From positions 6,899,154 to 6,963,153 of the forward strand of contig NC_068987.1 in NCBI RefSeq assembly GCF_001194135.2: a stretch of 64,000 nt of DNA, written 5' to 3'. Origin of the DNA: Octopus bimaculoides. Lineage: Eukaryota. The translations under genes were made by a program, and so were the position numbers. Every line of letters starts with the position of its first letter. Within the stretch, counting starts at the first letter, position 1. Of this stretch, positions 21,993-59,347 are shown piece after piece. Below the pieces are notes generated by a model, which was not told the DNA's origin, made no database searches, and saw only the letters and a program-made list of their open reading frames with translations.

Positions 21993-22114
21993 GCGTTGGT
22001 AGCTGAGACTTTGATATTAGCGAAAACCCATGGCTACGCGGATAAGATTGAAAATGAGTTGGAAGAAGAATTGCGTCGTGACAGTAAGGGGCCCCCAAAA
22101 GAAATTTCGGCGAG
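21993..22114 (+). CDS. Hv3: Hv-family proton channel (Hv3-like), first identified coding exon (cytoplasmic N-terminus)
   Basis: Acceptor tctacag|GCG, donor CGAG|gtaagt. 122 nt, open throughout (ALVAETLILAKTHGYADKIENELEEELRRDSKGPPKEISA-R). Ends in phase 2, matching the next exon. No Met, so an upstream exon is required. Confidence 0.85.
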
Positions 22115-33357: not shown

Positions 33358-34120
33358 CACTAGTGAGTTGAACTGGTTATGGAAGTTTAAAATTGAAATG
33401 GCCTAACGATAAAATGTTTACAAATATACCAAATATAGTAAAAGTTCCTCAATCCTATGTTGTTTCGTTAGTGAACAGAACTGTTGAAAACTCTATCTTC
33501 TGCCCATTTCAGTCTCTTCTGCTTATGAACATCCTTCAGAGGGGGGGGGGGGCTTGTAACAAGTTTAACATTCCTGGCTACCTGCTTCAAGAGGCGACAC
33601 CTGGTAGTTTTGGATACCTCCTCCCTGCCACAATGTTTGAAGATTTCTCTACTTGTCAGATATGGGTTCTGCACAACTCTCCTTTTCACCCATGATAAAA
33701 TACGATTCGAAGCAACCCTCGAATGGCCCTTATCTGCCCTCGATCGGACAAAAATAGGAGACTGCAAAAATTTCTTCATTGTTCGGTGATTCCTTACCAG
33801 TATTTTGGATACTTCTATGGTTGTTTTTCCTCTTCCAAGCTTTGACACAATGGTAGACTTCTCATTTGAAGTAAGATCACATTTCTGATCCTTAATTATA
33901 CTTAAATTGGATACATGCCTAATAATTTGGGATAGCAGAAATATTGCTGCTACACGATAATGGCTGCCGTTTGTTTTCGTCTGCGCAGATCCAATTTATT
34001 TTAACAGAATTTACGCAGGTAAGGGTTGCCAACAGTCAGTGAGAAAACAACTGATTTTGAACGTATATACACTTATTTATTGAGAGAAGGTTGATTTGCC
34101 TAACAATGTGGGACGCAGTG
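33358..34120 (-). mobile_element. Internally deleted Tc1/mariner element retaining the transposase DNA-binding region
   Basis: ORF 33468-33848 (KRRVVQNPYLTSREIF...VSKTTRCRLLK...PPPLKDVHKQKRLKWA) is a Tc1 N-terminal HTH region; DDE domain absent. TIR CACTGCGTCCCACATTGTTAGGCAAAT at 34094-34120, a degenerate partner from 33358, and TA at 33356-33357 and 34121-34122. Confidence 0.85.
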
Positions 34121-42746: not shown

Positions 42747-42871
42747 ATTACGTCGAAAAGGAGAGATGTTTTTCCATAGCCGCTTTGTGATTTTAACCGT
42801 TGTTATTTTGTGCGTTCTTGACTGCGCCTTGGTCCTGGGAGAACTTATTTTGGACTTGCACAGTGTTAGAG
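42747..42871 (+). CDS. Hv3: Hv3-like exon: S0 and S1 helix with selectivity-filter Asp
   Basis: tttcag|A...AGAG|gtaagt, 125 nt (phase 2 to 1). Encodes LRRKGEMFFHSRFVILTVVILCVLDCALVLGELILDLHSVR; VLDCALVLGELILDL aligns to human Hv1 VLDALLVLAELILDL (D112/E119/D123). Asp codon at 42820-42822. Confidence 0.93.
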
Positions 42872-50294: not shown

Positions 50295-50617
50295 ACACGC
50301 TGCAAGAAACAGAAAAACTTAGTGATTCATTTATAAATAAACTCAGGAACAAATACCCCACAGACATGGAAGGCATGCAGGAGCACTTGATCTATGTTTA
50401 TGAAAAAGTTCTAGACTCCGTAATGACGTGGCCCAAGAATAGCTCGGTGCCCAACACAACCCGTCCAACCCGCTCGCGACGTGCAGCCGACGTCGACCCT
50501 ATAATGGAAAAGTGGAATGTTCATGTGCGGTTACCCGGCTCTCATACGCTCGAGGAAGAGATAGGGCACGCCTTCCATTTGGCCAGTATCTCCATACTTG
50601 CAGTCTTAGTCGCTGGT
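50295..50617 (+). CDS. Hv3: Hv3-like exon: long extracellular S1-S2 loop and first part of S2
   Basis: tttcag|AC...GCTGGT|gtaaat, 323 nt (phase 1 to 0). DTLQETEKLSDSFINKLRNKYPTDMEGMQEHLIYVYEKVLDSVMTWPKNSSVPNTTRPTRSRRAADVDPIMEKWNVHVRLPGSHTLEEEIGHAFHLASISILAVLVAG. FHLASISIL matches Hv1 FHYMSITIL. The donor is weak, so the 3' boundary is less certain. Confidence 0.9.
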
Positions 50618-50920
50618 GTAAATATGCACTTTTATTTTTCCATTATTCATTATATTTTAAGAAAAAAAAAATGGTAACCGATAAAATGCACTTCACATAA
50701 ATAACCAACAATTGTGTAAACAAAATATATCCGAGAATTTATATTCATATGTGGAATGTGTGTGTGATGGTTTGCGTGTACGTATATATGTATATATACT
50801 TTCATTGTTTAATTGGCAGGTAGTTATAAAAGTGAGCGAAGCCTCGAGAGTGTCTGACATGGCGTTTATCGTCAATCTCTAATTACATATACACACACAC
50901 ACACAAACACGCAGGTACGT

Positions 50921-50970
<50 letters not shown>

Positions 50971-51959
50971 ACACACACATGCTTACAGATTTGGTAGAAC
51001 AAACAAAATAGTTAGTTTTAAATATTTATTATATTGACCATGGAAGGTTTTATCCTAGCATTTTCCAGGATGTTTTATTAATCTATTTGCTTACCTATTT
51101 AAGTTTAAAAAAATGCATCTTAGACTGTAAGCTCACAAAATATAACGTAGAATGTCGTTGTCATCCAATATCTGACTAGTCTTCTTGTCGTCATTTCAAA
51201 ATTATCCATCTGCTCCTACTTGTCATGTGACAAGAGTTTGTCGAATAAAATTCATGTTGGAAAGTAAAAATTTAGTTTTATGTAATAGTGAAGGACAATC
51301 CGCTGACTGTATCATGTTCTCTCCACTTATGATAATATATTAAAGTGATTTTGACGCATCTGTCAAGTTGAAGTAGACTCGGATATAGTAACCAACTAAA
51401 ATAATGAGCGATAAACATTCCATTGTGCAAAACAAATCAAATCCGGATTGTAATATATGCTTCTGTCACTCACTTATTCCTAGTTAATCTGTTATAATTT
51501 AGAATTTATTTCGATGCCTTCCTACCTTTAACTGTGATTCTTTCATATTATATTTAACTTTTTCACTATTTTGCTTATTTTTATAGCTAATGGCTAATGA
51601 TATTTTCTTTCAGTTTTCCTGTCTTCACTTCTAGTGGCATATTACGCAATCAAACTTCCATATAAACTTGATTCCTACGACGTATATTATGTGATTATAT
51701 ATGTGTGCCTCTCCCTATATACCTGTGCATATTGAACACGGCTAAATTTAATTATTTGCTGAAGTTTACTGTCTATTCTAGTCTCAATGATATTTTCTGC
51801 TGCATAGAATTTTCCTAAGAACGTGGTGTAATCCGTTCGATTCTTCTTTGGTTACAATGATACTATTACAATGATACCATTGCTATTACAATGATACTGT
51901 TGCATCCAATTTCAGCTTGTTCTGGCTCATTATGTTCTGATTTCAAATACCACCAATAT

Positions 51960-52080
51960 CAAGTTAGCTTATTATCCTTTCGGTTTTGATAAGATAAAGT
52001 ATCAGTCATTTAGAAGAGTCGGTGATATCGACTTACTCCCTCTCAAAATTTCTGATTTGTACCTAAATTAGAAATATTTA
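51960..52080 (+). mobile_element. 3' half of an old SINE copy
   Basis: TATCCTTTCGGTTTTGATAAGATAAAGTATCAG...CCCTCTCAAAATTTCTG matches the family core and tail. Confidence 0.55.
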
Positions 52081-52216
52081 TTATATTCATGCGTTAAGAC
52101 AAGTAGGAAAACTATCCTAGTATTGTTATTTTCTGTAATATCCTTATGTGTATGTAATTTGTAAATATCTTTACTGAAGTAGTTGGCCTCCATTACATTT
52201 GCACTAATTATAAACA

Positions 52217-52217
<1 letters not shown>

Positions 52218-52282
<65 letters not shown>

Positions 52283-52293
52283 GTATCTATCTA
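52218..52293. repeat. (CTAT)n microsatellite
   Basis: Direct inspection. Confidence 0.95.
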
Positions 52294-53498
52294 TCTCTTA
52301 TATATATANNNNNNNNNNNNNNNNNNNNNNNNNNNNNNNNNNNNNNNNNNNNNNNNNNNNNNNNNNNNNNNNNNNNNNNNNNNNNNNNNNNNNNNNNNNN
52401 NNNNNNNNNNNNNNNNNNNNNNNNNNNNNNNNNNNNNNNNNNNNNNNNNNNNNNNNNNNNNNNNNNNNNNNNNNNNNNNNNNNNNNNNNNNNNNNNNNNN
52501 NNNNNNNNNNNNNNNNNNNNNNNTTGAGTAAACGTAAGCAACGTTTTGAACCATGAAGAATTTGTACCGAATTCTAGCAGAGTTGTGAATTTGTTTTAAC
52601 ATTTTTTTGAAATTGTCTAATAATACAGACATGGTTGTGTGTGCCTTTTGCACTACTATTCTCATGGTTGTATGTTTTATAGTGCTTCAATTTTATTAGA
52701 TCAGATGTCTCACACAAGCAAGTCTGACCTGTCAGATTTTACAACACATTTGCCATTTTTTTTATGTCGTTAAAAGTAGGCATAGTCACCAACTCAGCCT
52801 AAACCTAGAGGAACATCGAGTATGTGACAGCTGAAGAGAAGCTGTACCTGCAGACTGTTAGTCTTAGGTTTCATTTGAATAGACTAGATCAAAGCCAACT
52901 GATCTTTGTTTGCTCAAATAGGACATTGTAATGCCCAGTCCTGAGATCGAACCCACAACCTAATGTTAACCAGTAAGCTACGTAACTTGCAATCCATTAT
53001 GTTAGAAAATTATATATATCCTGATGATTGATAATCTTTATATGTGTAATCGCCTGCCAGGATTTGTGTTCAATAATTAAAATTAGTGTGAATCTTCGTT
53101 TATTTTTCTATAACATGTACGTACCCTGTTAACTGATGCGTGACATATATATTAAGTTGTAATAAGATATCACAGCGTGCTTTCCGTTCTCCCTCTTACA
53201 TCTTTGTTTCAATCATGCCATTGCTATGCACACATTGTTAGTATCAGTATTTCAGCTGACATACTTTTTATGGTATTTCTTATTTTCCATAGCATTTTTA
53301 TTAAAAATTCAACCTGAAATTGCTTGCATATATGTAAAAAACATACCGAACATTTGTCTGGCATAAAGAGGTGTGCTACGAATAGTGTTTGTGCAACAGA
53401 AATATAGATATTAACAATGATTTATCTACTTTCCCATTTTTTTGTCTGTGCTTTACTGTTTTTAAGCATTCTATATTTGGCTTTACATATATTTACAG

Positions 53499-53552
53499 AC
53501 GTTATTAAAAATGATATGTTTCGGCACAAGATTTTTTAAAGGAAAATTGGAG
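53499..53552 (+). CDS. Hv3: Hv3-like small exon: end of S2 and S2-S3 linker
   Basis: atttacag|ACG...GAG|gtaagt, 54 nt, phase 0/0. TLLKMICFGTRFFKGKLE aligns to Hv1 IIFKLFVFRLEFFHHKFE (K157, E171). Too short to appear in the ORF track. Confidence 0.92.
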
Positions 53553-55416
53553 GTAAGTTAGCCATCAGATGAATTCCTTACTTTTCTTTTAAATCGTATG
53601 CGCATGTATAAGTCTTATATGTCTGAAAGAATGAATTGGATATTTCTTAGAGATGACAAGGAATTTGTAAATGTGATACAACAAATAACATTATCTCTAG
53701 GTAAACCAAGCAGAAATACTGGCTAAAGGTAATGGGACAATTGTAAACATGCTAATAGAATAAGTTTATTCACAAATAATGATACAACAAACTTTAAGAA
53801 ATATATTCATTTGAGCAAGAATACTTATGGGAGGGTGATGGAGATAGAATCCTCATGCACCTTTTCCATAGGGTTCTATCTGAAGCAACTGTTATTACAT
53901 ATTGAGGATAGATTCCCTAGAGTGATGATCTGAGGCTATAAATATTAGCCAGCCATCTCATTTTCGGACTGTCTGTCTATAGGTTTCGTACTGGTTGGCT
54001 GTGTGTGAAACCCTGTCTTTCAGTTTTTTACTACGACATTCTTATCACGTGTCTGTAGTATCTGGTTGAAGTAGCGGCGCAAGAATATAAAGTTAAGCCG
54101 TTATAACGTATCACAAGAATTTAATATGGAGTCAAAAGTCAAATGGACAATAAGGTTAAAATGAAGTTACTGGATCAAGATCTACTGAAAGCTGTATTGT
54201 AAGGGCTTTAGAAAAAAATTCTTGTACTAAGATATCTTATTGAAATGAGGTAAGCATGTGAAGAATATTTACCGACTTACCAATAAAACTACTGCCCAAC
54301 AGTATTTATTGACTATTTATCCATTCCTGAAATGTATTTATAGATAAATGGTCCCTTACAGAACAGTGGAAATACGTTAAAAAAAACCGCTCCAATGAAA
54401 AGGGTTTACGATGAATGCTTTGGGTTAGAGAGGTGAATGTCGAGGAAATATCTCAGACAGGTGAAAAATGTTATTGATTCCATTAAAGAAATTTAATCGA
54501 ATCTTCGAAGTAAAATAGTGATAGAAATAGTAAGAACGGAAGCTTAACGTATGAAAAGAAAAAGGAAAATTTAAGATCAGATATTTAACAAGTTACTTAA
54601 GATGTCATAAATGATGAAGATCTTTGGAAAATATATACAAATTTCAAGAAGCTTAAAAATATATGAGAAAATAAAATATAAATTAAGGATGATCGACATA
54701 ATGTCATAAAAGGTAAAATGTTACCTGGAAAGTACAATCTTATGACAGTGTGAGAAAGGAGTGAATTAGGAAGGGAAAGAAAAGGTGAAAAAGAAATTGA
54801 AGAACTTGTATTTAATAAAAGTTATGAAATATACATAGATTAGAATAAAACAAACGAGGGAAAGATGAAATAAAAATATAGCGGGACAATGTTTTAAGGA
54901 TGGGAAAAAAAGAGCGAAAATAAAACAAGAGAAAGAAGAGGAGAAAAATTTTGAGAGAAATATAATGCAACAAAGATGTGATCAGCAACTCAATTTCTTT
55001 GTAAACCACGCTTATCAAAAGGATGTTAGCAGTTACAGAGAGAATACCAATGCGTTGCCGTAAACATTTCTATATGTTTATCTATGCACTGTTATATTTT
55101 GTAAAGGAACATAAAAGAATTAAACAAGAGTTGAATATTAAGGAACTCTGGATGAACATGAAAATATACACACACACACACACACACACTCTCATTCACT
55201 AACACTCACATATATATATATATATATAAATAGAGAGAGAGAGAAAGAGGGGGAGATAAGCGAGAGAGAGAGAGAGAGATGAGAGAGAGACATTTGAGGG
55301 AGAGAGAAAGAAATAATGTAATATTAATTTGTGTGTATATTATCATTCTTAAAACAAACAACTGGTTTTTCTTCATATCTAAAATGTCATTATATATTTC
55401 TTTATATTTTCTGCAG

Positions 55417-55555
55417 GTATTTGATGCCGCTATCCTGATAGTTTCCTTCATTGTAGATCTTATATTCGTAAATGGCCTTCCAAGATATAAGATAGAGGAG
55501 TTTGTCTTCATTCTAGCCTTCCTGTTACCCTGGAGAGTTATTCGTGTAGTGAACA
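55417..55555 (+). CDS. Hv3: Hv3-like exon: S3 and S4
   Basis: ttctgcag|GTA...AACA|gtaag, 139 nt (phase 0 to 1). VFDAAILIVSFIVDLIFVNGLPRYKIEEFVFILAFLLPWRVIRVVN. Carries D174 and D185 equivalents and the Hv WRxxRxxN signature, with LP replacing RL. Confidence 0.95.
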
Positions 55556-55815
55556 GTAAGTTTATTTTTTATTTCATTTATTAATCTGTGGTTTATAGAG
55601 GCAAACAGAATATTAAATGATATGAAATACATACTTCAAAATTATTTCCTAAATCTTTTACAAATACCAGAAATATAAGATTGCTATACATAAGAAAAAA
55701 ACAGTACGAGTGCATGATCTTAAAGAACAGAACTTATTTATGATTATTTCCATGCATCGCTTCACAAAATGAAAAAAAAATAATACAATGAATACATTTT
55801 CTTTTAATTTTTCAG

Positions 55816-55931
55816 GTCTTGTAGTAGCTGTCAAAGATCACGAACACTTTCGCCTCAAACTAGTGTACAGTCGTAAAAAGAAAATTTTAGCCGTATTAAA
55901 ACAAAAAGAATTAAAATTAGATTTATTCCAA
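55816..55931 (+). CDS. Hv3: Hv3-like exon: S4 C-terminal extension and start of coiled coil
   Basis: tttttcag|GT...CAA|gtaagt, 116 nt (phase 1 to 0). SLVVAVKDHEHFRLKLVYSRKKKILAVLKQKELKLDLFQ. Confidence 0.93.
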
Positions 55932-56468
55932 GTAAGTTGATAAATGTTAACTTCCTTTAAATGGCGCAGTTCACTCCCAATCCTGTATTTCGGCATATAT
56001 ATATATATANNNNNNNNNNNNNNNNNNNNNNNNNNNNNNNNNNNNNNNNNNNNNNNNNNNNNNNNNNNNNNNNNNNNNNNNNNNNNNNNNNNNNNNNNNN
56101 NNNNNNNNNNNNNNNNNNNNNNNNNNNNNNNNNNNNNNNNNNNNNNNNNNNNNNNNNNNNNNNNNNNNNNNNNNNNNNNNNNNNNNNNNNNNNNNNNNNN
56201 NNNNNNNNNNNNNNNNNNNNNNNNNNNNNNNNNNNNNNNNNNNNNNNNNNNNNNNNNNNNNNNNNNNNNNNNNNNNNNNNNNNNNNNNNNNNNNNNNNNN
56301 NNNNNNNNNNNNNNNNNNNNNNNNNNNNNNNNNNNNNNNNNNNNNNNNNNNNNNNNNNNNNNNNNNNNNNNNNNNNNNNNNNNNNNNNNNNNNNNNNNNN
56401 NNNNNNNNNNNNNNNNNNNNNNNNNNNNNNNNNNNNNNNNNNNNNNNNNNNNNNNNNNNNNNNNNNNN

Positions 56469-58288: not shown

Positions 58289-58379
58289 ACTCAAATTGAT
58301 AGTTTACGAAAATTATGTGTATCACATGGAATAACTGACAGTCAAATTAACCAGTGCCTCTATCAAGAAGAACCAAAAG
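58289..58379 (+). CDS. Hv3: Hv3-like exon: distal coiled coil
   Basis: ttttag|ACT...AAAG|gtaggt, 91 nt (phase 0 to 1). TQIDSLRKLCVSHGITDSQINQCLYQEEPK resembles the end of the Hv coiled coil (human IERLNKLLRQHG). Confidence 0.88.
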
Positions 58380-59347
58380 GTAGGTGCCTAACAGCGTACC
58401 AAATCTTTTTTCTTTCTTTTTTTCTTTCTTTTTCTTCTTGCTTTTCTTATTATTATTAATATTTTATTTTATGATTTTGTTGTTTACAGTTATGCTTGTG
58501 GATGTTTATCTGTTGTTTAAATTATTTATTGAAATTAGTCATTACTCCCTTAGCATCTTCTCTTATTCCTGCTGCTCAGAATATGGGAATATAATTTGCG
58601 CAGTGGTCAGCCGGCGAAGGTTATCGGGTAAGTAACTGAAATGTTTAAGTAATTAGGCTGTGAGTAGTCAATGAATTACTTAAATATTTGACCAATACTT
58701 CCACGTGGTACAACAAAATCAGGCAAACAGAATTAAAACAACAACAACAACAACAATATAGTGATACTAGTGTCAATGATATTATGAATAACAATAATAA
58801 TATTAATATTAATTGTAATAATATTCAATATTATTATCATTATTATTATTACCATAATAATCCTGCATTATGATGATGATTATGATAGCATGTTCTTGTG
58901 GCTATATTAGGCATCATTGTTATTTTGAAAAAATAATGAAAATACCAAAATAATTGACCGGAAAAAGACAGAATGAATAATATTTACGACTCCGTAACCA
59001 TTAGATAACGTAATATGATTTTGATAGAATTATTACTTACAAAGAAGGATAACTAGAGCATTTATCTTATAGAAAAATATAATTTACCAATATAAAAGAT
59101 TACCAAAATCAGATGTATCAGAAACCTCTTTAGCATTGAAAAAGATTTTATTCCTTCAGCAGTTAACCTAAAGATAAGATCTATTCACTTGAAATAGATA
59201 ACAGCCGAACAGACTCTTTAGACGCATCATACCATTTCTGTTTCAAAACAGAAAATGTTAAGTTTTGTAAATTGATTCAAAAATTCAAGAGAGAAGTATA
59301 TAAAAAATGTGAATTTTTGCTATTTTCTCTTATCGTTTTTGTTGCAG

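What the first reader, a model, noticed from the sequence alone, without database searches (positions are those of the whole stretch)
50600..53510. S2 appears to have lost both the E153 counter-charge and the F150 hydrophobic plug, at a weak splice donor
Seen: spliced S2 reads SISILAVLVAG|TLLK against human SITILVFFMME-IIFK. The F150 equivalent is Leu (50606-50608) and the E153 equivalent is Gly (GGT, 50615-50617), the last codon before a weak donor (GGT|gtaaat). Established: the S2 Glu and Phe form the charge-transfer centre and intracellular salt-bridge network of voltage sensors. Inference: paired loss of S4 R1 and of the S2 Glu/Phe could mark an even less voltage-dependent, open-biased proton channel. 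It could instead be a base error or a hidden micro-exon. Donor G|gtgtaa plus AG would give GAG (Glu), but that needs a non-canonical AC acceptor at 53496.
Basis: partly seen in the sequence, partly recalled or inferred. Interest (0 to 1): 0.72.

Follow-up and report, generated by a model that had tools for sequence, protein, structure and literature searches.

The report
Octopus Hv3 proton channel lacks S2 glutamate
The window holds an octopus gene for an unusual "Hv3-type" proton channel in which a normally conserved acidic residue of the voltage sensor is truly glycine in all cephalopods sampled. This is a real, modestly interesting lineage-specific variant, not a sequencing or splicing artefact.

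Summary
Window 50295-50617 and 53499-52 are two exons of Octopus bimaculoides LOC106869300, an Hv3-type (LPWRxxR) proton-channel paralogue. The intron splits S2 straight after the codon matching human E153. That codon is GGT (Gly) and the F150 position is TTA (Leu).

The assembly gap (52309-52523) lies wholly inside this GT-AG intron and does not affect the reading frame.

The glycine is not an error or a hidden micro-exon:
- O. sinensis, O. vulgaris and Argonauta hians share it. The Argonauta intron is gap-free and ends its exon GGT|gtaaat.
- Run-level genomic contigs of another Octopus share it.
- RNA-seq contigs of a more distant cephalopod read GCT GGC ACA: Gly by a synonymous codon, joined directly.

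Orthologues in gastropods and bivalves have Glu (Gln in two), and the one chiton relative found has Glu, so E-to-G is cephalopod-specific and held under strong purifying selection.

The "lost F150" part is not special. No Hv3-type protein surveyed has Phe there, including the characterised Aplysia AcHv3. About a fifth of Hv3-type S2 variants also lack the S2 acid.

The idea of a more open-biased channel is a reasonable but untested inference. Interest is moderate to low.

The parts
5496..5558 (+). Exon 1 of LOC106869300 (start codon; MSSPIPPGDRKNSAIR[VSAIR]). It has tandem donors at 5543 and 5558.
   Evidence: tblastn of P0009 against the window; exact coordinates.
21993..22114 (+). Exon 2, the N-terminal cytoplasmic helix (ALVAETLILAKTHGYADKIENELEEELRRDSKGPPKEISA).
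42747..42871 (+). S1 exon (LRRKGEMFFHSRFVILTVVILCVLDCALVLGELILDLHSVR). It holds the equivalents of D112, E119 and D123. Donor AGAG|gtaagt, phase 1.
50295..50617 (+). Exon for the long S1-S2 extracellular loop and the outer two-thirds of S2 (..HAFHLASISILAVLVAG). Leu 50606-08 is the F150 position. Gly GGT 50615-17 is the E153 position and the last codon. Donor GGT|gtaaat, phase 0.
50618..53498 (+). GT-AG intron, 2881 bp as assembled. It contains the assembly gap 52309-52523, which is flanked by (TATC)n/(TA)n repeats. No conserved internal block.
53499..53552 (+). Exon for the inner end of S2 and the S2-S3 linker (TLLKMICFGTRFFKGKLE). It holds the K157 and E171 equivalents. Donor GGAG|gtaagt.
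55417..55555 (+). S3-S4 exon (VFDAAILIVSFIVDLIFVNGLPRYKIEEFVFILAFLLPWRVIRVVN). D174 and D185 equivalents are present. S4 has the Hv3 motif LPWRVIR, with R1 replaced by Leu and a Pro before the Trp.
55816..55931 (+). Exon for the start of the C-terminal helix (predicted coiled coil) (S)LVVAVKDHEHFRLKLVYSRKKKILAVLKQKELKLDLFQ.
58289..58379 (+). Exon TQIDSLRKLCVSHGITDSQINQCLYQEEPK.
58580..58627 (+). Cassette exon EYGNIICAVVSRRRLS. It is absent from isoform X3. The remaining 3' exons lie outside the window.

Best explanation
The finding sits in Octopus bimaculoides LOC106869300. This gene encodes an 'unconventional' Hv3-type voltage-gated proton-channel paralogue. Its hallmarks are the S4 motif LPWRxxR, a long S1-S2 loop and a predicted C-terminal helix where AcHv3 has its coiled coil.

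An ancient phase-0 intron splits S2 straight after the codon matching human E153. The bivalve Pinctada has GAG|gtgaga at the same place. In the cephalopod lineage this codon became Gly (GGT or GGC). That change also removed the consensus A and G at donor positions -2 and -1, which is why the donor looks weak. The site is still used. The change has been fixed and kept under purifying selection across Octopus, Argonauta and a deeper-branching cephalopod.

Leu at the F150 position is the ancestral state of the whole Hv3 family.

Shown: gene identity, exon structure, the reality and phylogenetic distribution of Gly, and selective constraint.

Inferred: neutralising E153 in human Hv1 shifts activation by -55 to more than -100 mV, because it destabilises the closed state. 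AcHv3 already shows leak and very shallow voltage dependence. By analogy, the cephalopod protein is predicted to be a proton pathway still more biased to the open or leaky state. Two further cephalopod-specific S2 changes may repack the inner S2 face: A-to-M at human position 158 and A-to-F at position 161.
For: Gene identity:
- P0009 (XP_014770462.1 / XP_052825150.1) matches every exon located in the window; the six exons from S1 on translate exactly to its sequence.
- The Hv3 motif matches AcHv3 as described in PMC10911540.
- phmmer against human Hv1 5OQK gives E 4e-11 with a gapless S2 alignment.

Conserved intron position: Pinctada reads ATT GAG|gtgaga and cag|ACA ATT TTG AAG.

Gly in independent sources:
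- O. sinensis and O. vulgaris proteins.
- Argonauta genomic sequence GCC GGT|gtaaat.
- Run-level genomic contigs of another Octopus, GCT GGT|gtaaat.
- RNA-seq contigs L002 and L003, GCT GGC ACA ATT, which is VAG|TI.

Constraint: dN is 0.10 with dS saturated over 282 codons. In S2-S4, dN is 0.035 and dS 1.2, giving omega about 0.03.

Orthologues: Glu in 23 and Gln in 2 of 25 gastropod and bivalve sequences. The one chiton relative found has Glu.

F150 position: no Phe in any of 132 distinct Hv3-type S2 sequences.

E153 mutant data: PMC4969798.

Model: AF2 keeps S2 (residues 189-219) as one helix through G211, with pLDDT about 80.
Against: - No transcript of O. bimaculoides itself was available. 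The junction in this species rests on NCBI gene models, conservation, and a cDNA from a related species.
- No functional data exist for any Hv3-type protein that lacks the S2 acid.
- Ciona Hv1 E201G and E201A gave no current, so Gly might abolish conduction rather than bias the channel open.
- Neutralising the equivalent acids in Shaker had little effect (discussed in PMC4969798).
- The organism behind the outgroup cDNA (SRR29271455) was not identified, so the age of the substitution is only bracketed.
- P0009 does not reach any Pfam Ion_trans score.
- The AF2 model as a whole is low confidence, with mean pLDDT 56.
Confidence: 0.8

Rival explanations
1. The glycine is an artefact of the draft assembly. 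It could be a base or indel error at 50615-50620, or coding sequence hidden in the gap at 52309-52523. On this view the true protein has Glu.
For: The window is a gappy draft with 11 N runs. GCTG-GTGTAA could be read as GCT GAG|gtgtaa with two bases missing, by comparison with Pinctada GAG|gtgaga.
Against: - The same Gly appears in O. sinensis, O. vulgaris and Argonauta.
- Run-level contigs of another Octopus also read GGT|gtaaat.
- A spliced cDNA reads GGC|ACA.
- The Argonauta intron is gap-free, and nothing inside the intron is conserved between Octopus and Argonauta.
- S2 aligns to human Hv1 with no missing residues.
Confidence: 0.01
2. A different splice is used. Option (a) is the reader's G|gtgtaa donor with a non-canonical AC acceptor, which would restore GAG (Glu). 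Option (b) is the junction of an older gene model: G|gtgtaa plus ttttaag|CATTC, which inserts AFYIWLYIYLQ into S2.
For: The two candidate donors overlap and both are weak. Option (b) exists as a deposited model, P0157 (UniParc UPI0006954A77). It is in frame in the window.
Against: (a) GT-AC is not a known intron class. The outgroup cDNA has GGC, which cannot arise from G+AG.

(b) An 11-residue insertion breaks the gapless S2 alignment shared by every homologue. Argonauta has a TAA stop directly upstream of its cag acceptor and lacks the alternative acceptor. In the outgroup cDNA the last exon codon is GGC, so the shifted site would not begin with GT. All NCBI isoforms in three Octopus species use GGT|gtaaat. 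Option (b) yields no Glu in any case.
Confidence: 0.04
3. The protein is no longer a proton channel. With R1, Phe150 and Glu153 all absent, it could be a non-conducting or repurposed voltage-sensor-like protein, or a gene in decay.
For: Ciona E201G and E201A gave no current. P0009 gets no Pfam Ion_trans hit, whereas AcHv3 does. The review PMC10377628 notes that some mollusc Hv-derived sequences may no longer be proton channels.
Against: - Decay is excluded by omega of about 0.03 and intact exons across deeply diverged cephalopods.
- The S1 Asp selectivity filter, R2, R3, W207, N214, D174, D185, E171 and K157 equivalents are all kept.
- AcHv3 conducts protons selectively and also lacks R1 and Phe150.
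Confidence: 0.15

Closest known systems
Aplysia californica AcHv3 (LOC101855857, 980 aa; Chaves et al. 2022, PMC10911540)
   Same: It has the LPWRxxR S4 motif, with R1 replaced by Leu and a Pro before the Trp. It has Leu at the F150 position, a long S1-S2 loop and a predicted C-terminal coiled coil. The S1 Asp and the S3 acids are kept.
   Different: AcHv3 keeps Glu at the E153 position (LLIEVTMK). It lies in a different Hv3 subclade in the NJ tree. It is much longer, with a 299-aa loop and a 535-aa C-terminus. The octopus protein has Gly, a loop of about 90 aa and 436 aa in total.
Human Hv1 (HVCN1; PDB 5OQK) and its E153 mutants
   Same: It shares the four-helix voltage-sensor architecture with no pore domain. 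S2-S4 aligns without gaps in S2 (E 4e-11). E153A and E153C shift activation by about -55 mV, and other neutral substitutions shift it by up to more than -100 mV (PMC4969798). These mutants are the experimental analogue of the natural Gly.
   Different: Human Hv1 has R1 (RxWRxxR), Phe150, Glu153 and a short S1-S2 loop. It is steeply voltage dependent.
Ciona Hv1 E201G / E201A (Chamberlin et al. 2014, as tabulated in PMC4969798)
   Same: The same substitution (Glu to Gly) at the same S2 position.
   Different: It is an engineered mutant in a conventional Hv1 background and gave no detectable current. The cephalopod Gly is natural, fixed, and comes with other S2 changes.
Uncharacterised Hv3-type paralogues that lack the S2 acid. 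Examples are Crassostrea gigas LOC105333217 (Leu), Aplysia LOC101857936 (Ile), Lymnaea (Ala), and Mya/Mercenaria/Mactra (Trp or Tyr).
   Same: They are Hv3-type (xPWRxxR) proteins with a neutral residue at the E153 position.
   Different: They belong to other paralogue clades and carry bulky hydrophobic residues, not Gly. The cephalopod loss arose independently, within a clade that otherwise has Glu.

Membership tests
Voltage-gated proton channel (Hv) family | Significant sequence similarity to an experimentally established Hv1 across S1-S4 | tested here: met
   phmmer against the PDB: 5OQK human Hv1 E 4.1e-11 and 3WKV mouse Hv1 chimera E 1.8e-8. Ci-VSP reaches only E 0.3.
Voltage-gated proton channel (Hv) family | Four transmembrane helices (a voltage sensor only, with no S5-S6 pore) followed by a C-terminal coiled coil | tested here: met
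   AF2 secondary structure shows helices covering S1, S2 (189-219), S3 (227-249) and S4 (255-283), then a long helix at 285-326, with TM pLDDT of 70-84. No further TM segment is present. Foldseek support is weak: the best hit is the Ci-VSP voltage sensor at E 0.13.
Voltage-gated proton channel (Hv) family | Asp selectivity filter in S1 (human D112) | tested here: met
   CVLDCALVLGELILDL aligns with VVLDALLVLAELILDL.
Voltage-gated proton channel (Hv) family | S4 signature RxWRxxR with three Arg | tested here: not met
   S4 reads LLPWRVIRVVN. R1 is Leu, while R2, R3, Trp and Asn214 are present. This is the Hv3 variant of the motif.
Voltage-gated proton channel (Hv) family | S2 charge-transfer centre: Phe150 and Glu153 | tested here: not met
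   The residues are Leu and Gly.
Voltage-gated proton channel (Hv) family | Proton-selective, voltage- and pH-dependent conductance | not testable with these tools
   This needs electrophysiology.
Molluscan unconventional Hv3 subfamily (as defined in PMC10377628 and PMC10911540) | xPWRxxR S4 motif, with R1 absent and a Pro directly before the Trp | tested here: met
   LLPWRVIR is identical to AcHv3 (P0029) and to most of the Hv3-type sequences surveyed.
Molluscan unconventional Hv3 subfamily (as defined in PMC10377628 and PMC10911540) | [quoted passage not shown] | tested here: met
   About 90 residues separate S1 and S2 and are encoded by 50295-50560. Human Hv1 has about 15. In the AF2 model this stretch is partly helical and partly disordered.
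Molluscan unconventional Hv3 subfamily (as defined in PMC10377628 and PMC10911540) | Large intracellular domains | tested here: inconclusive
   The protein is 436 aa, with a C-terminus of about 150 aa and an N-terminus of about 65 aa. That is larger than conventional Hv (200-250 aa) but far smaller than AcHv3 (980 aa).
Molluscan unconventional Hv3 subfamily (as defined in PMC10377628 and PMC10911540) | Groups with Hv3-type sequences rather than conventional Hv in a tree | tested here: met
   A profile search and an NJ tree place the cephalopod clade next to a gastropod plus bivalve clade of PW-type proteins. It is a rough distance tree with no support values.
Pfam PF00520 Ion_trans | Score at or above the gathering threshold (25 bits) | tested here: not met
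   P0009 has no hit at E <= 0.01. AcHv3 scores 26.9 bits and the oyster orthologue 23.1 bits.

The most novel reading that the evidence does not exclude
Cephalopods have fixed a natural 'triple-null' voltage sensor with no R1, no Phe150 and no Glu153. Co-evolved S2 changes (A158M and A161F in human numbering) accompany it. On this reading it works as an essentially voltage-independent, constitutively open proton leak, or as a repurposed sensor. That would make it a natural experiment on what the S2 counter-charge contributes to Hv gating.
Probability: 0.25. Interest if true: 0.5.

Novelty: new member of a known kind. Interest (0 to 1): 0.3.

Why it matters
Glu153 is one of the most conserved counter-charges in voltage sensors, and Hv channels are the simplest system for studying gating. 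Here a natural Gly at that site has been kept under strong constraint across deeply diverged cephalopods, in a scaffold that already lacks R1 and the S2 phenylalanine.

This offers a ready-made revertant experiment (G211E in octopus, Glu to Gly in AcHv3). It could separate the contributions of R1, the hydrophobic gasket and the inner counter-charge to leak and voltage dependence.

The value is limited. The Hv3 family is already known to be aberrant. The gene is already annotated, as an uncharacterised protein. Neutral residues at this site also recur in other Hv3 paralogues.

Tried and rejected
- The first word-indexed protein search with the S1-S4 core returned only 7 hits and no cephalopods. 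The index is sparse, so absence there meant nothing. The exhaustive profile search and a profile-seeded search found the family.
- Exact-product look-ups failed for C. virginica P0001, O. sinensis P0155 and O. vulgaris P0170. Only Pinctada, Argonauta and the Logan contigs gave DNA.
- No paper mentions SRR29271455 or SRR29271462, so the outgroup cephalopod stays unidentified. A last protein search seeded with its protein found no named squid, cuttlefish or Nautilus orthologue.
- The Chaves et al. supplement, which holds the Hv3 alignment and octopus sequences, is not held as text.
- The Rfam, tRNA and bacterial promoter/terminator scans were uninformative for this eukaryotic locus.
- The Foldseek search of the AF2 model gave only a non-significant voltage-sensor hit.
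- A-to-I RNA editing was considered as a way to restore an acid. It is rejected on first principles, because GGU and GGC contain no adenosine.
- An in-frame donor further into the intron (TG|gtaacc at 50674) was considered. It is in the wrong phase and would add 18 residues.
Full report
**1. What is in the sequence**

The + strand at 50540-50617 reads ...CAC GCC TTC CAT TTG GCC AGT ATC TCC ATA CTT GCA GTC TTA GTC GCT GGT|gtaaat. At 53499 the sequence ttacag|ACG TTA TTA AAA ATG ATA TGT TTC GGC... begins, and that exon ends GGAG|gtaagt at 53552. Spliced, this gives HAFHLASISILAVLVAG|TLLKMICFGTRFFKGKLE.

Leu is at 50606-08 and Gly (GGT) is at 50615-17.

A tblastn with human Hv1, written out from memory, found S1 at 42763-42870 and S3-S4 at 55405-55557. 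I then fixed ten exons of the gene in the window.

For six exons, from S1 to 58379, I checked both splice sites. All six have AG acceptors and GT donors. Five of the donors are GTAAGT or GTAGGT. The S2 donor, GGT|GTAAAT, matches only 5 of 9 consensus positions, so "weak donor" is a fair description.

**2. The assembly gap**

The N run at 52309-52523 lies inside the intron 50618-53498 and is flanked by (TATC)n and (TA)n repeats. Four results show it has no bearing on the reading frame:
- The two exons join in phase 0 and align to human Hv1 (PDB 5OQK, E 4e-11) with no gap anywhere in S2.
- The orthologous intron in Argonauta hians is 1194 bp with no N. It has the same exon ends, GCC GGT|gtaaat and aacag|ACA ATA TTA AAA.
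- Between Octopus and Argonauta only the two exons are conserved, plus 8 and 4 flanking intron bases. Everything else that matches is microsatellite. There is no conserved micro-exon.
- A spliced transcript from a related cephalopod joins the exons directly.

**3. Identity of the gene**

An exhaustive profile search of 1.84 billion representative proteins returned 590 relatives. One of them, P0009, is 100% identical to my core query (S2 through S4 and the first residues after it).

P0009 is XP_014770462.1 / XP_052825150.1, [quoted passage not shown]. All the exons I could locate are in the window, and the six exons from S1 on translate exactly to its sequence. The last exons lie beyond the window.

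S4 reads FLLPWRVIRVVN. R1 is Leu and a Pro precedes the Trp. This is the hallmark that Chaves et al. describe for Aplysia AcHv3, a proton-selective channel with leak and an e-fold conductance change per about 60 mV (PMC10911540). The review PMC10377628 defines the "unconventional Hv3" group by xPWRxxR, a large S1-S2 loop and large intracellular domains.

The equivalents of D112, E119, D123, K157, E171, D174, D185, W207, R208, R211 and N214 are all present. Of the acidic network, only E153 is missing.

**4. Is the glycine real?**

Yes. Independent sources agree:
- O. sinensis isoforms and the O. vulgaris protein read ...ILAVLVAGTLLKMICFG.
- Argonauta hians genomic DNA reads GCC GGT|gtaaat.
- Contigs assembled from single genomic sequencing runs of another Octopus (Logan SRR11869391, SRR11869394 and SRR11869384) read GTT GCT GGT|gtaaatatgcac.
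- Two RNA-seq contigs of 1.6 and 2.0 kb (Logan SRR29271455 and SRR29271462) carry the whole spliced ORF. They read GTA GCT GGC ACA ATT TTA AAG, which is VAG|TILK.

That last species lies outside Octopus plus Argonauta. In S2-S4 it is 83% identical at nucleotide level, against 95% between Octopus and Argonauta. It uses a synonymous Gly codon.

This rules out a base error in the window.

An older deposited model (P0157) uses G|gtgtaa with ttttaag|CATTC and inserts AFYIWLYIYLQ into S2. That junction breaks the family-wide gapless alignment. It is impossible in Argonauta, which has a TAA stop directly before the acceptor. It gives no Glu either.

**5. Constraint**

Comparing O. bimaculoides with the outgroup cDNA over 282 codons gives dN 0.10 with synonymous sites saturated. 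Within S2-S4, dN is 0.035 and dS 1.2, so omega is about 0.03. The gene is under strong purifying selection and is not decaying.

**6. Is it lineage-specific?**

In a rough NJ tree the cephalopod sequences form one clade. That clade sits next to a clade of gastropod and bivalve orthologues:
- Gastropods: Littorina, Patella, Haliotis, Gigantopelta.
- Bivalves: oysters, scallops, mussels, Mya, Mercenaria, Dreissena, Pinctada.

I also counted the snails Physella, Biomphalaria and Babylonia with this set, because of their close core similarity and identical S4 motif.

In that set the site is Glu in 23 sequences and Gln in 2 (Mactra and Biomphalaria). The one chiton relative found, Liolophura, has Glu.

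The intron position is ancient. Pinctada reads ATT GAG|gtgaga ... cag|ACA ATT TTG AAG. The Glu-to-Gly change therefore happened in the last codon of the exon. It necessarily removed the consensus A and G at donor positions -2 and -1, which explains the weak donor.

**7. What is not special**

Among 132 distinct Hv3-type S2+S4 sequences, the F150 position is Leu 100, Ile 14, Met 14, Val 3, one misaligned model and Phe 0. Phe occurs only in conventional RxWR-type sequences. AcHv3 itself (P0029, Aplysia LOC101855857, 980 aa) has Leu. Chaves et al. had already suggested a breach of the hydrophobic gasket as a cause of its leak.

The S2 acid is also missing from about 20% of distinct Hv3-type S2 sequences. 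These belong to other paralogue clades and carry Leu, Ile, Phe, Trp, Tyr, Val, Met or Ala. Examples are C. gigas LOC105333217 and Aplysia LOC101857936. Gly occurs only in the cephalopod sequences.

**8. Mechanism**

Shown: this is a conserved Hv3-type gene whose S2 counter-charge is Gly in cephalopods.

Inferred: in human Hv1, neutral E153 substitutions shift the activation threshold by -55 to more than -100 mV, and the inner acids stabilise the closed state (PMC4969798). Adding this to an Hv3 scaffold with two S4 charges and no Phe suggests an even more open-biased or leaky proton pathway.

Caveats:
- The same table lists Ciona E201G and E201A as giving no current.
- Neutralising the equivalent acids in Shaker had little effect.
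- AcHv3 may work in intracellular membranes.

Besides E-to-G, cephalopods share three fixed changes against otherwise near-invariant Ala residues in or just before S2: A194G, A216M and A219F. A216 and A219 match human positions 158 and 161. This may be compensatory repacking of the inner face of S2, but that is speculation.

The AF2 model keeps S2 as one helix through G211, with pLDDT about 80. The model as a whole is low confidence, and Foldseek gave only a non-significant hit to a voltage-sensor domain.

**9. Verdict**

The E153 loss is real and specific to cephalopods. The F150 "loss" is a family trait, and the functional consequence is untested.

The gene is an already annotated but uncharacterised member of a known, recently described channel subfamily. 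Interest is moderate to low.

Noticed in passing
window 5543-5558: Exon 1 ends in tandem donors, ATCAGG|gtaagtgcaataagg|gtaagt. Using one or the other adds or removes the five residues VSAIR (isoform X1 against X2).
   Followed up: partly
window 58580-58627: A 48-nt cassette exon (EYGNIICAVVSRRRLS) is present in isoforms X1 and X2 and skipped in X3. O. sinensis models also show several alternative C-termini after ...QEEPK.
   Followed up: partly
P0009 residues 194, 216 and 219 (window about 50564-66, 53511-13 and 53520-22): Three more cephalopod-only fixed changes lie in or just before S2, each replacing an Ala that is near-invariant in gastropod and bivalve orthologues: A194G, A216M and A219F. 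The last two sit on the inner half of S2, below the Gly.
   Followed up: partly
P0231 (Mactra antiquata) and P0233 (Biomphalaria glabrata); about 20% of distinct Hv3-type S2 sequences: Two orthologues carry Gln instead of Glu at the E153 position. Whole Hv3 paralogue clades in bivalves and gastropods carry Leu, Ile, Phe, Trp, Tyr, Val, Met or Ala there. Natural loss of this counter-charge is therefore recurrent in the family. I found no description of this in the papers I read.
   Followed up: partly
window 53466-53498 (intron) and P0157: An older deposited model (UniParc UPI0006954A77) uses G|gtgtaa plus ttttaag|CATTC and puts 11 extra residues (AFYIWLYIYLQ) into S2. The open frame is not conserved in Argonauta.
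   Followed up: yes
window 33468-33848 (- strand): A 126-aa ORF resembles a Tc1/mariner-type transposase N-terminus (Pfam HTH_Tnp_Tc3_2, E 7.7e-5, below the cut-off). It lies in the large intron between exon 2 and the S1 exon.
   Followed up: partly
window 8620, 10358, 13216, 14070, 38025, 46069, 52309, 56010, 57436, 62646, 63555 (gap starts): There are eleven assembly gaps. Those I inspected are flanked by (TA)n, (CA)n or (TATC)n microsatellites, so the breaks appear to be driven by repeats. None falls inside a coding exon located here; the gap at 56010 begins about 80 bases after the exon that ends at 55931.
   Followed up: partly
window 52900-52990: A stretch in the S2 intron looked like a reverse-strand tRNA-derived SINE (..gatcgaacccacaacc..). 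ARAGORN and Rfam found no tRNA in the window.
   Followed up: partly
P0009 whole protein: The octopus protein gets no Pfam Ion_trans hit at E <= 0.01. AcHv3 scores 26.9 bits and the oyster orthologue 23.1 bits. Domain-based annotation would therefore miss this gene, which fits its 'uncharacterized protein' label.
   Followed up: yes
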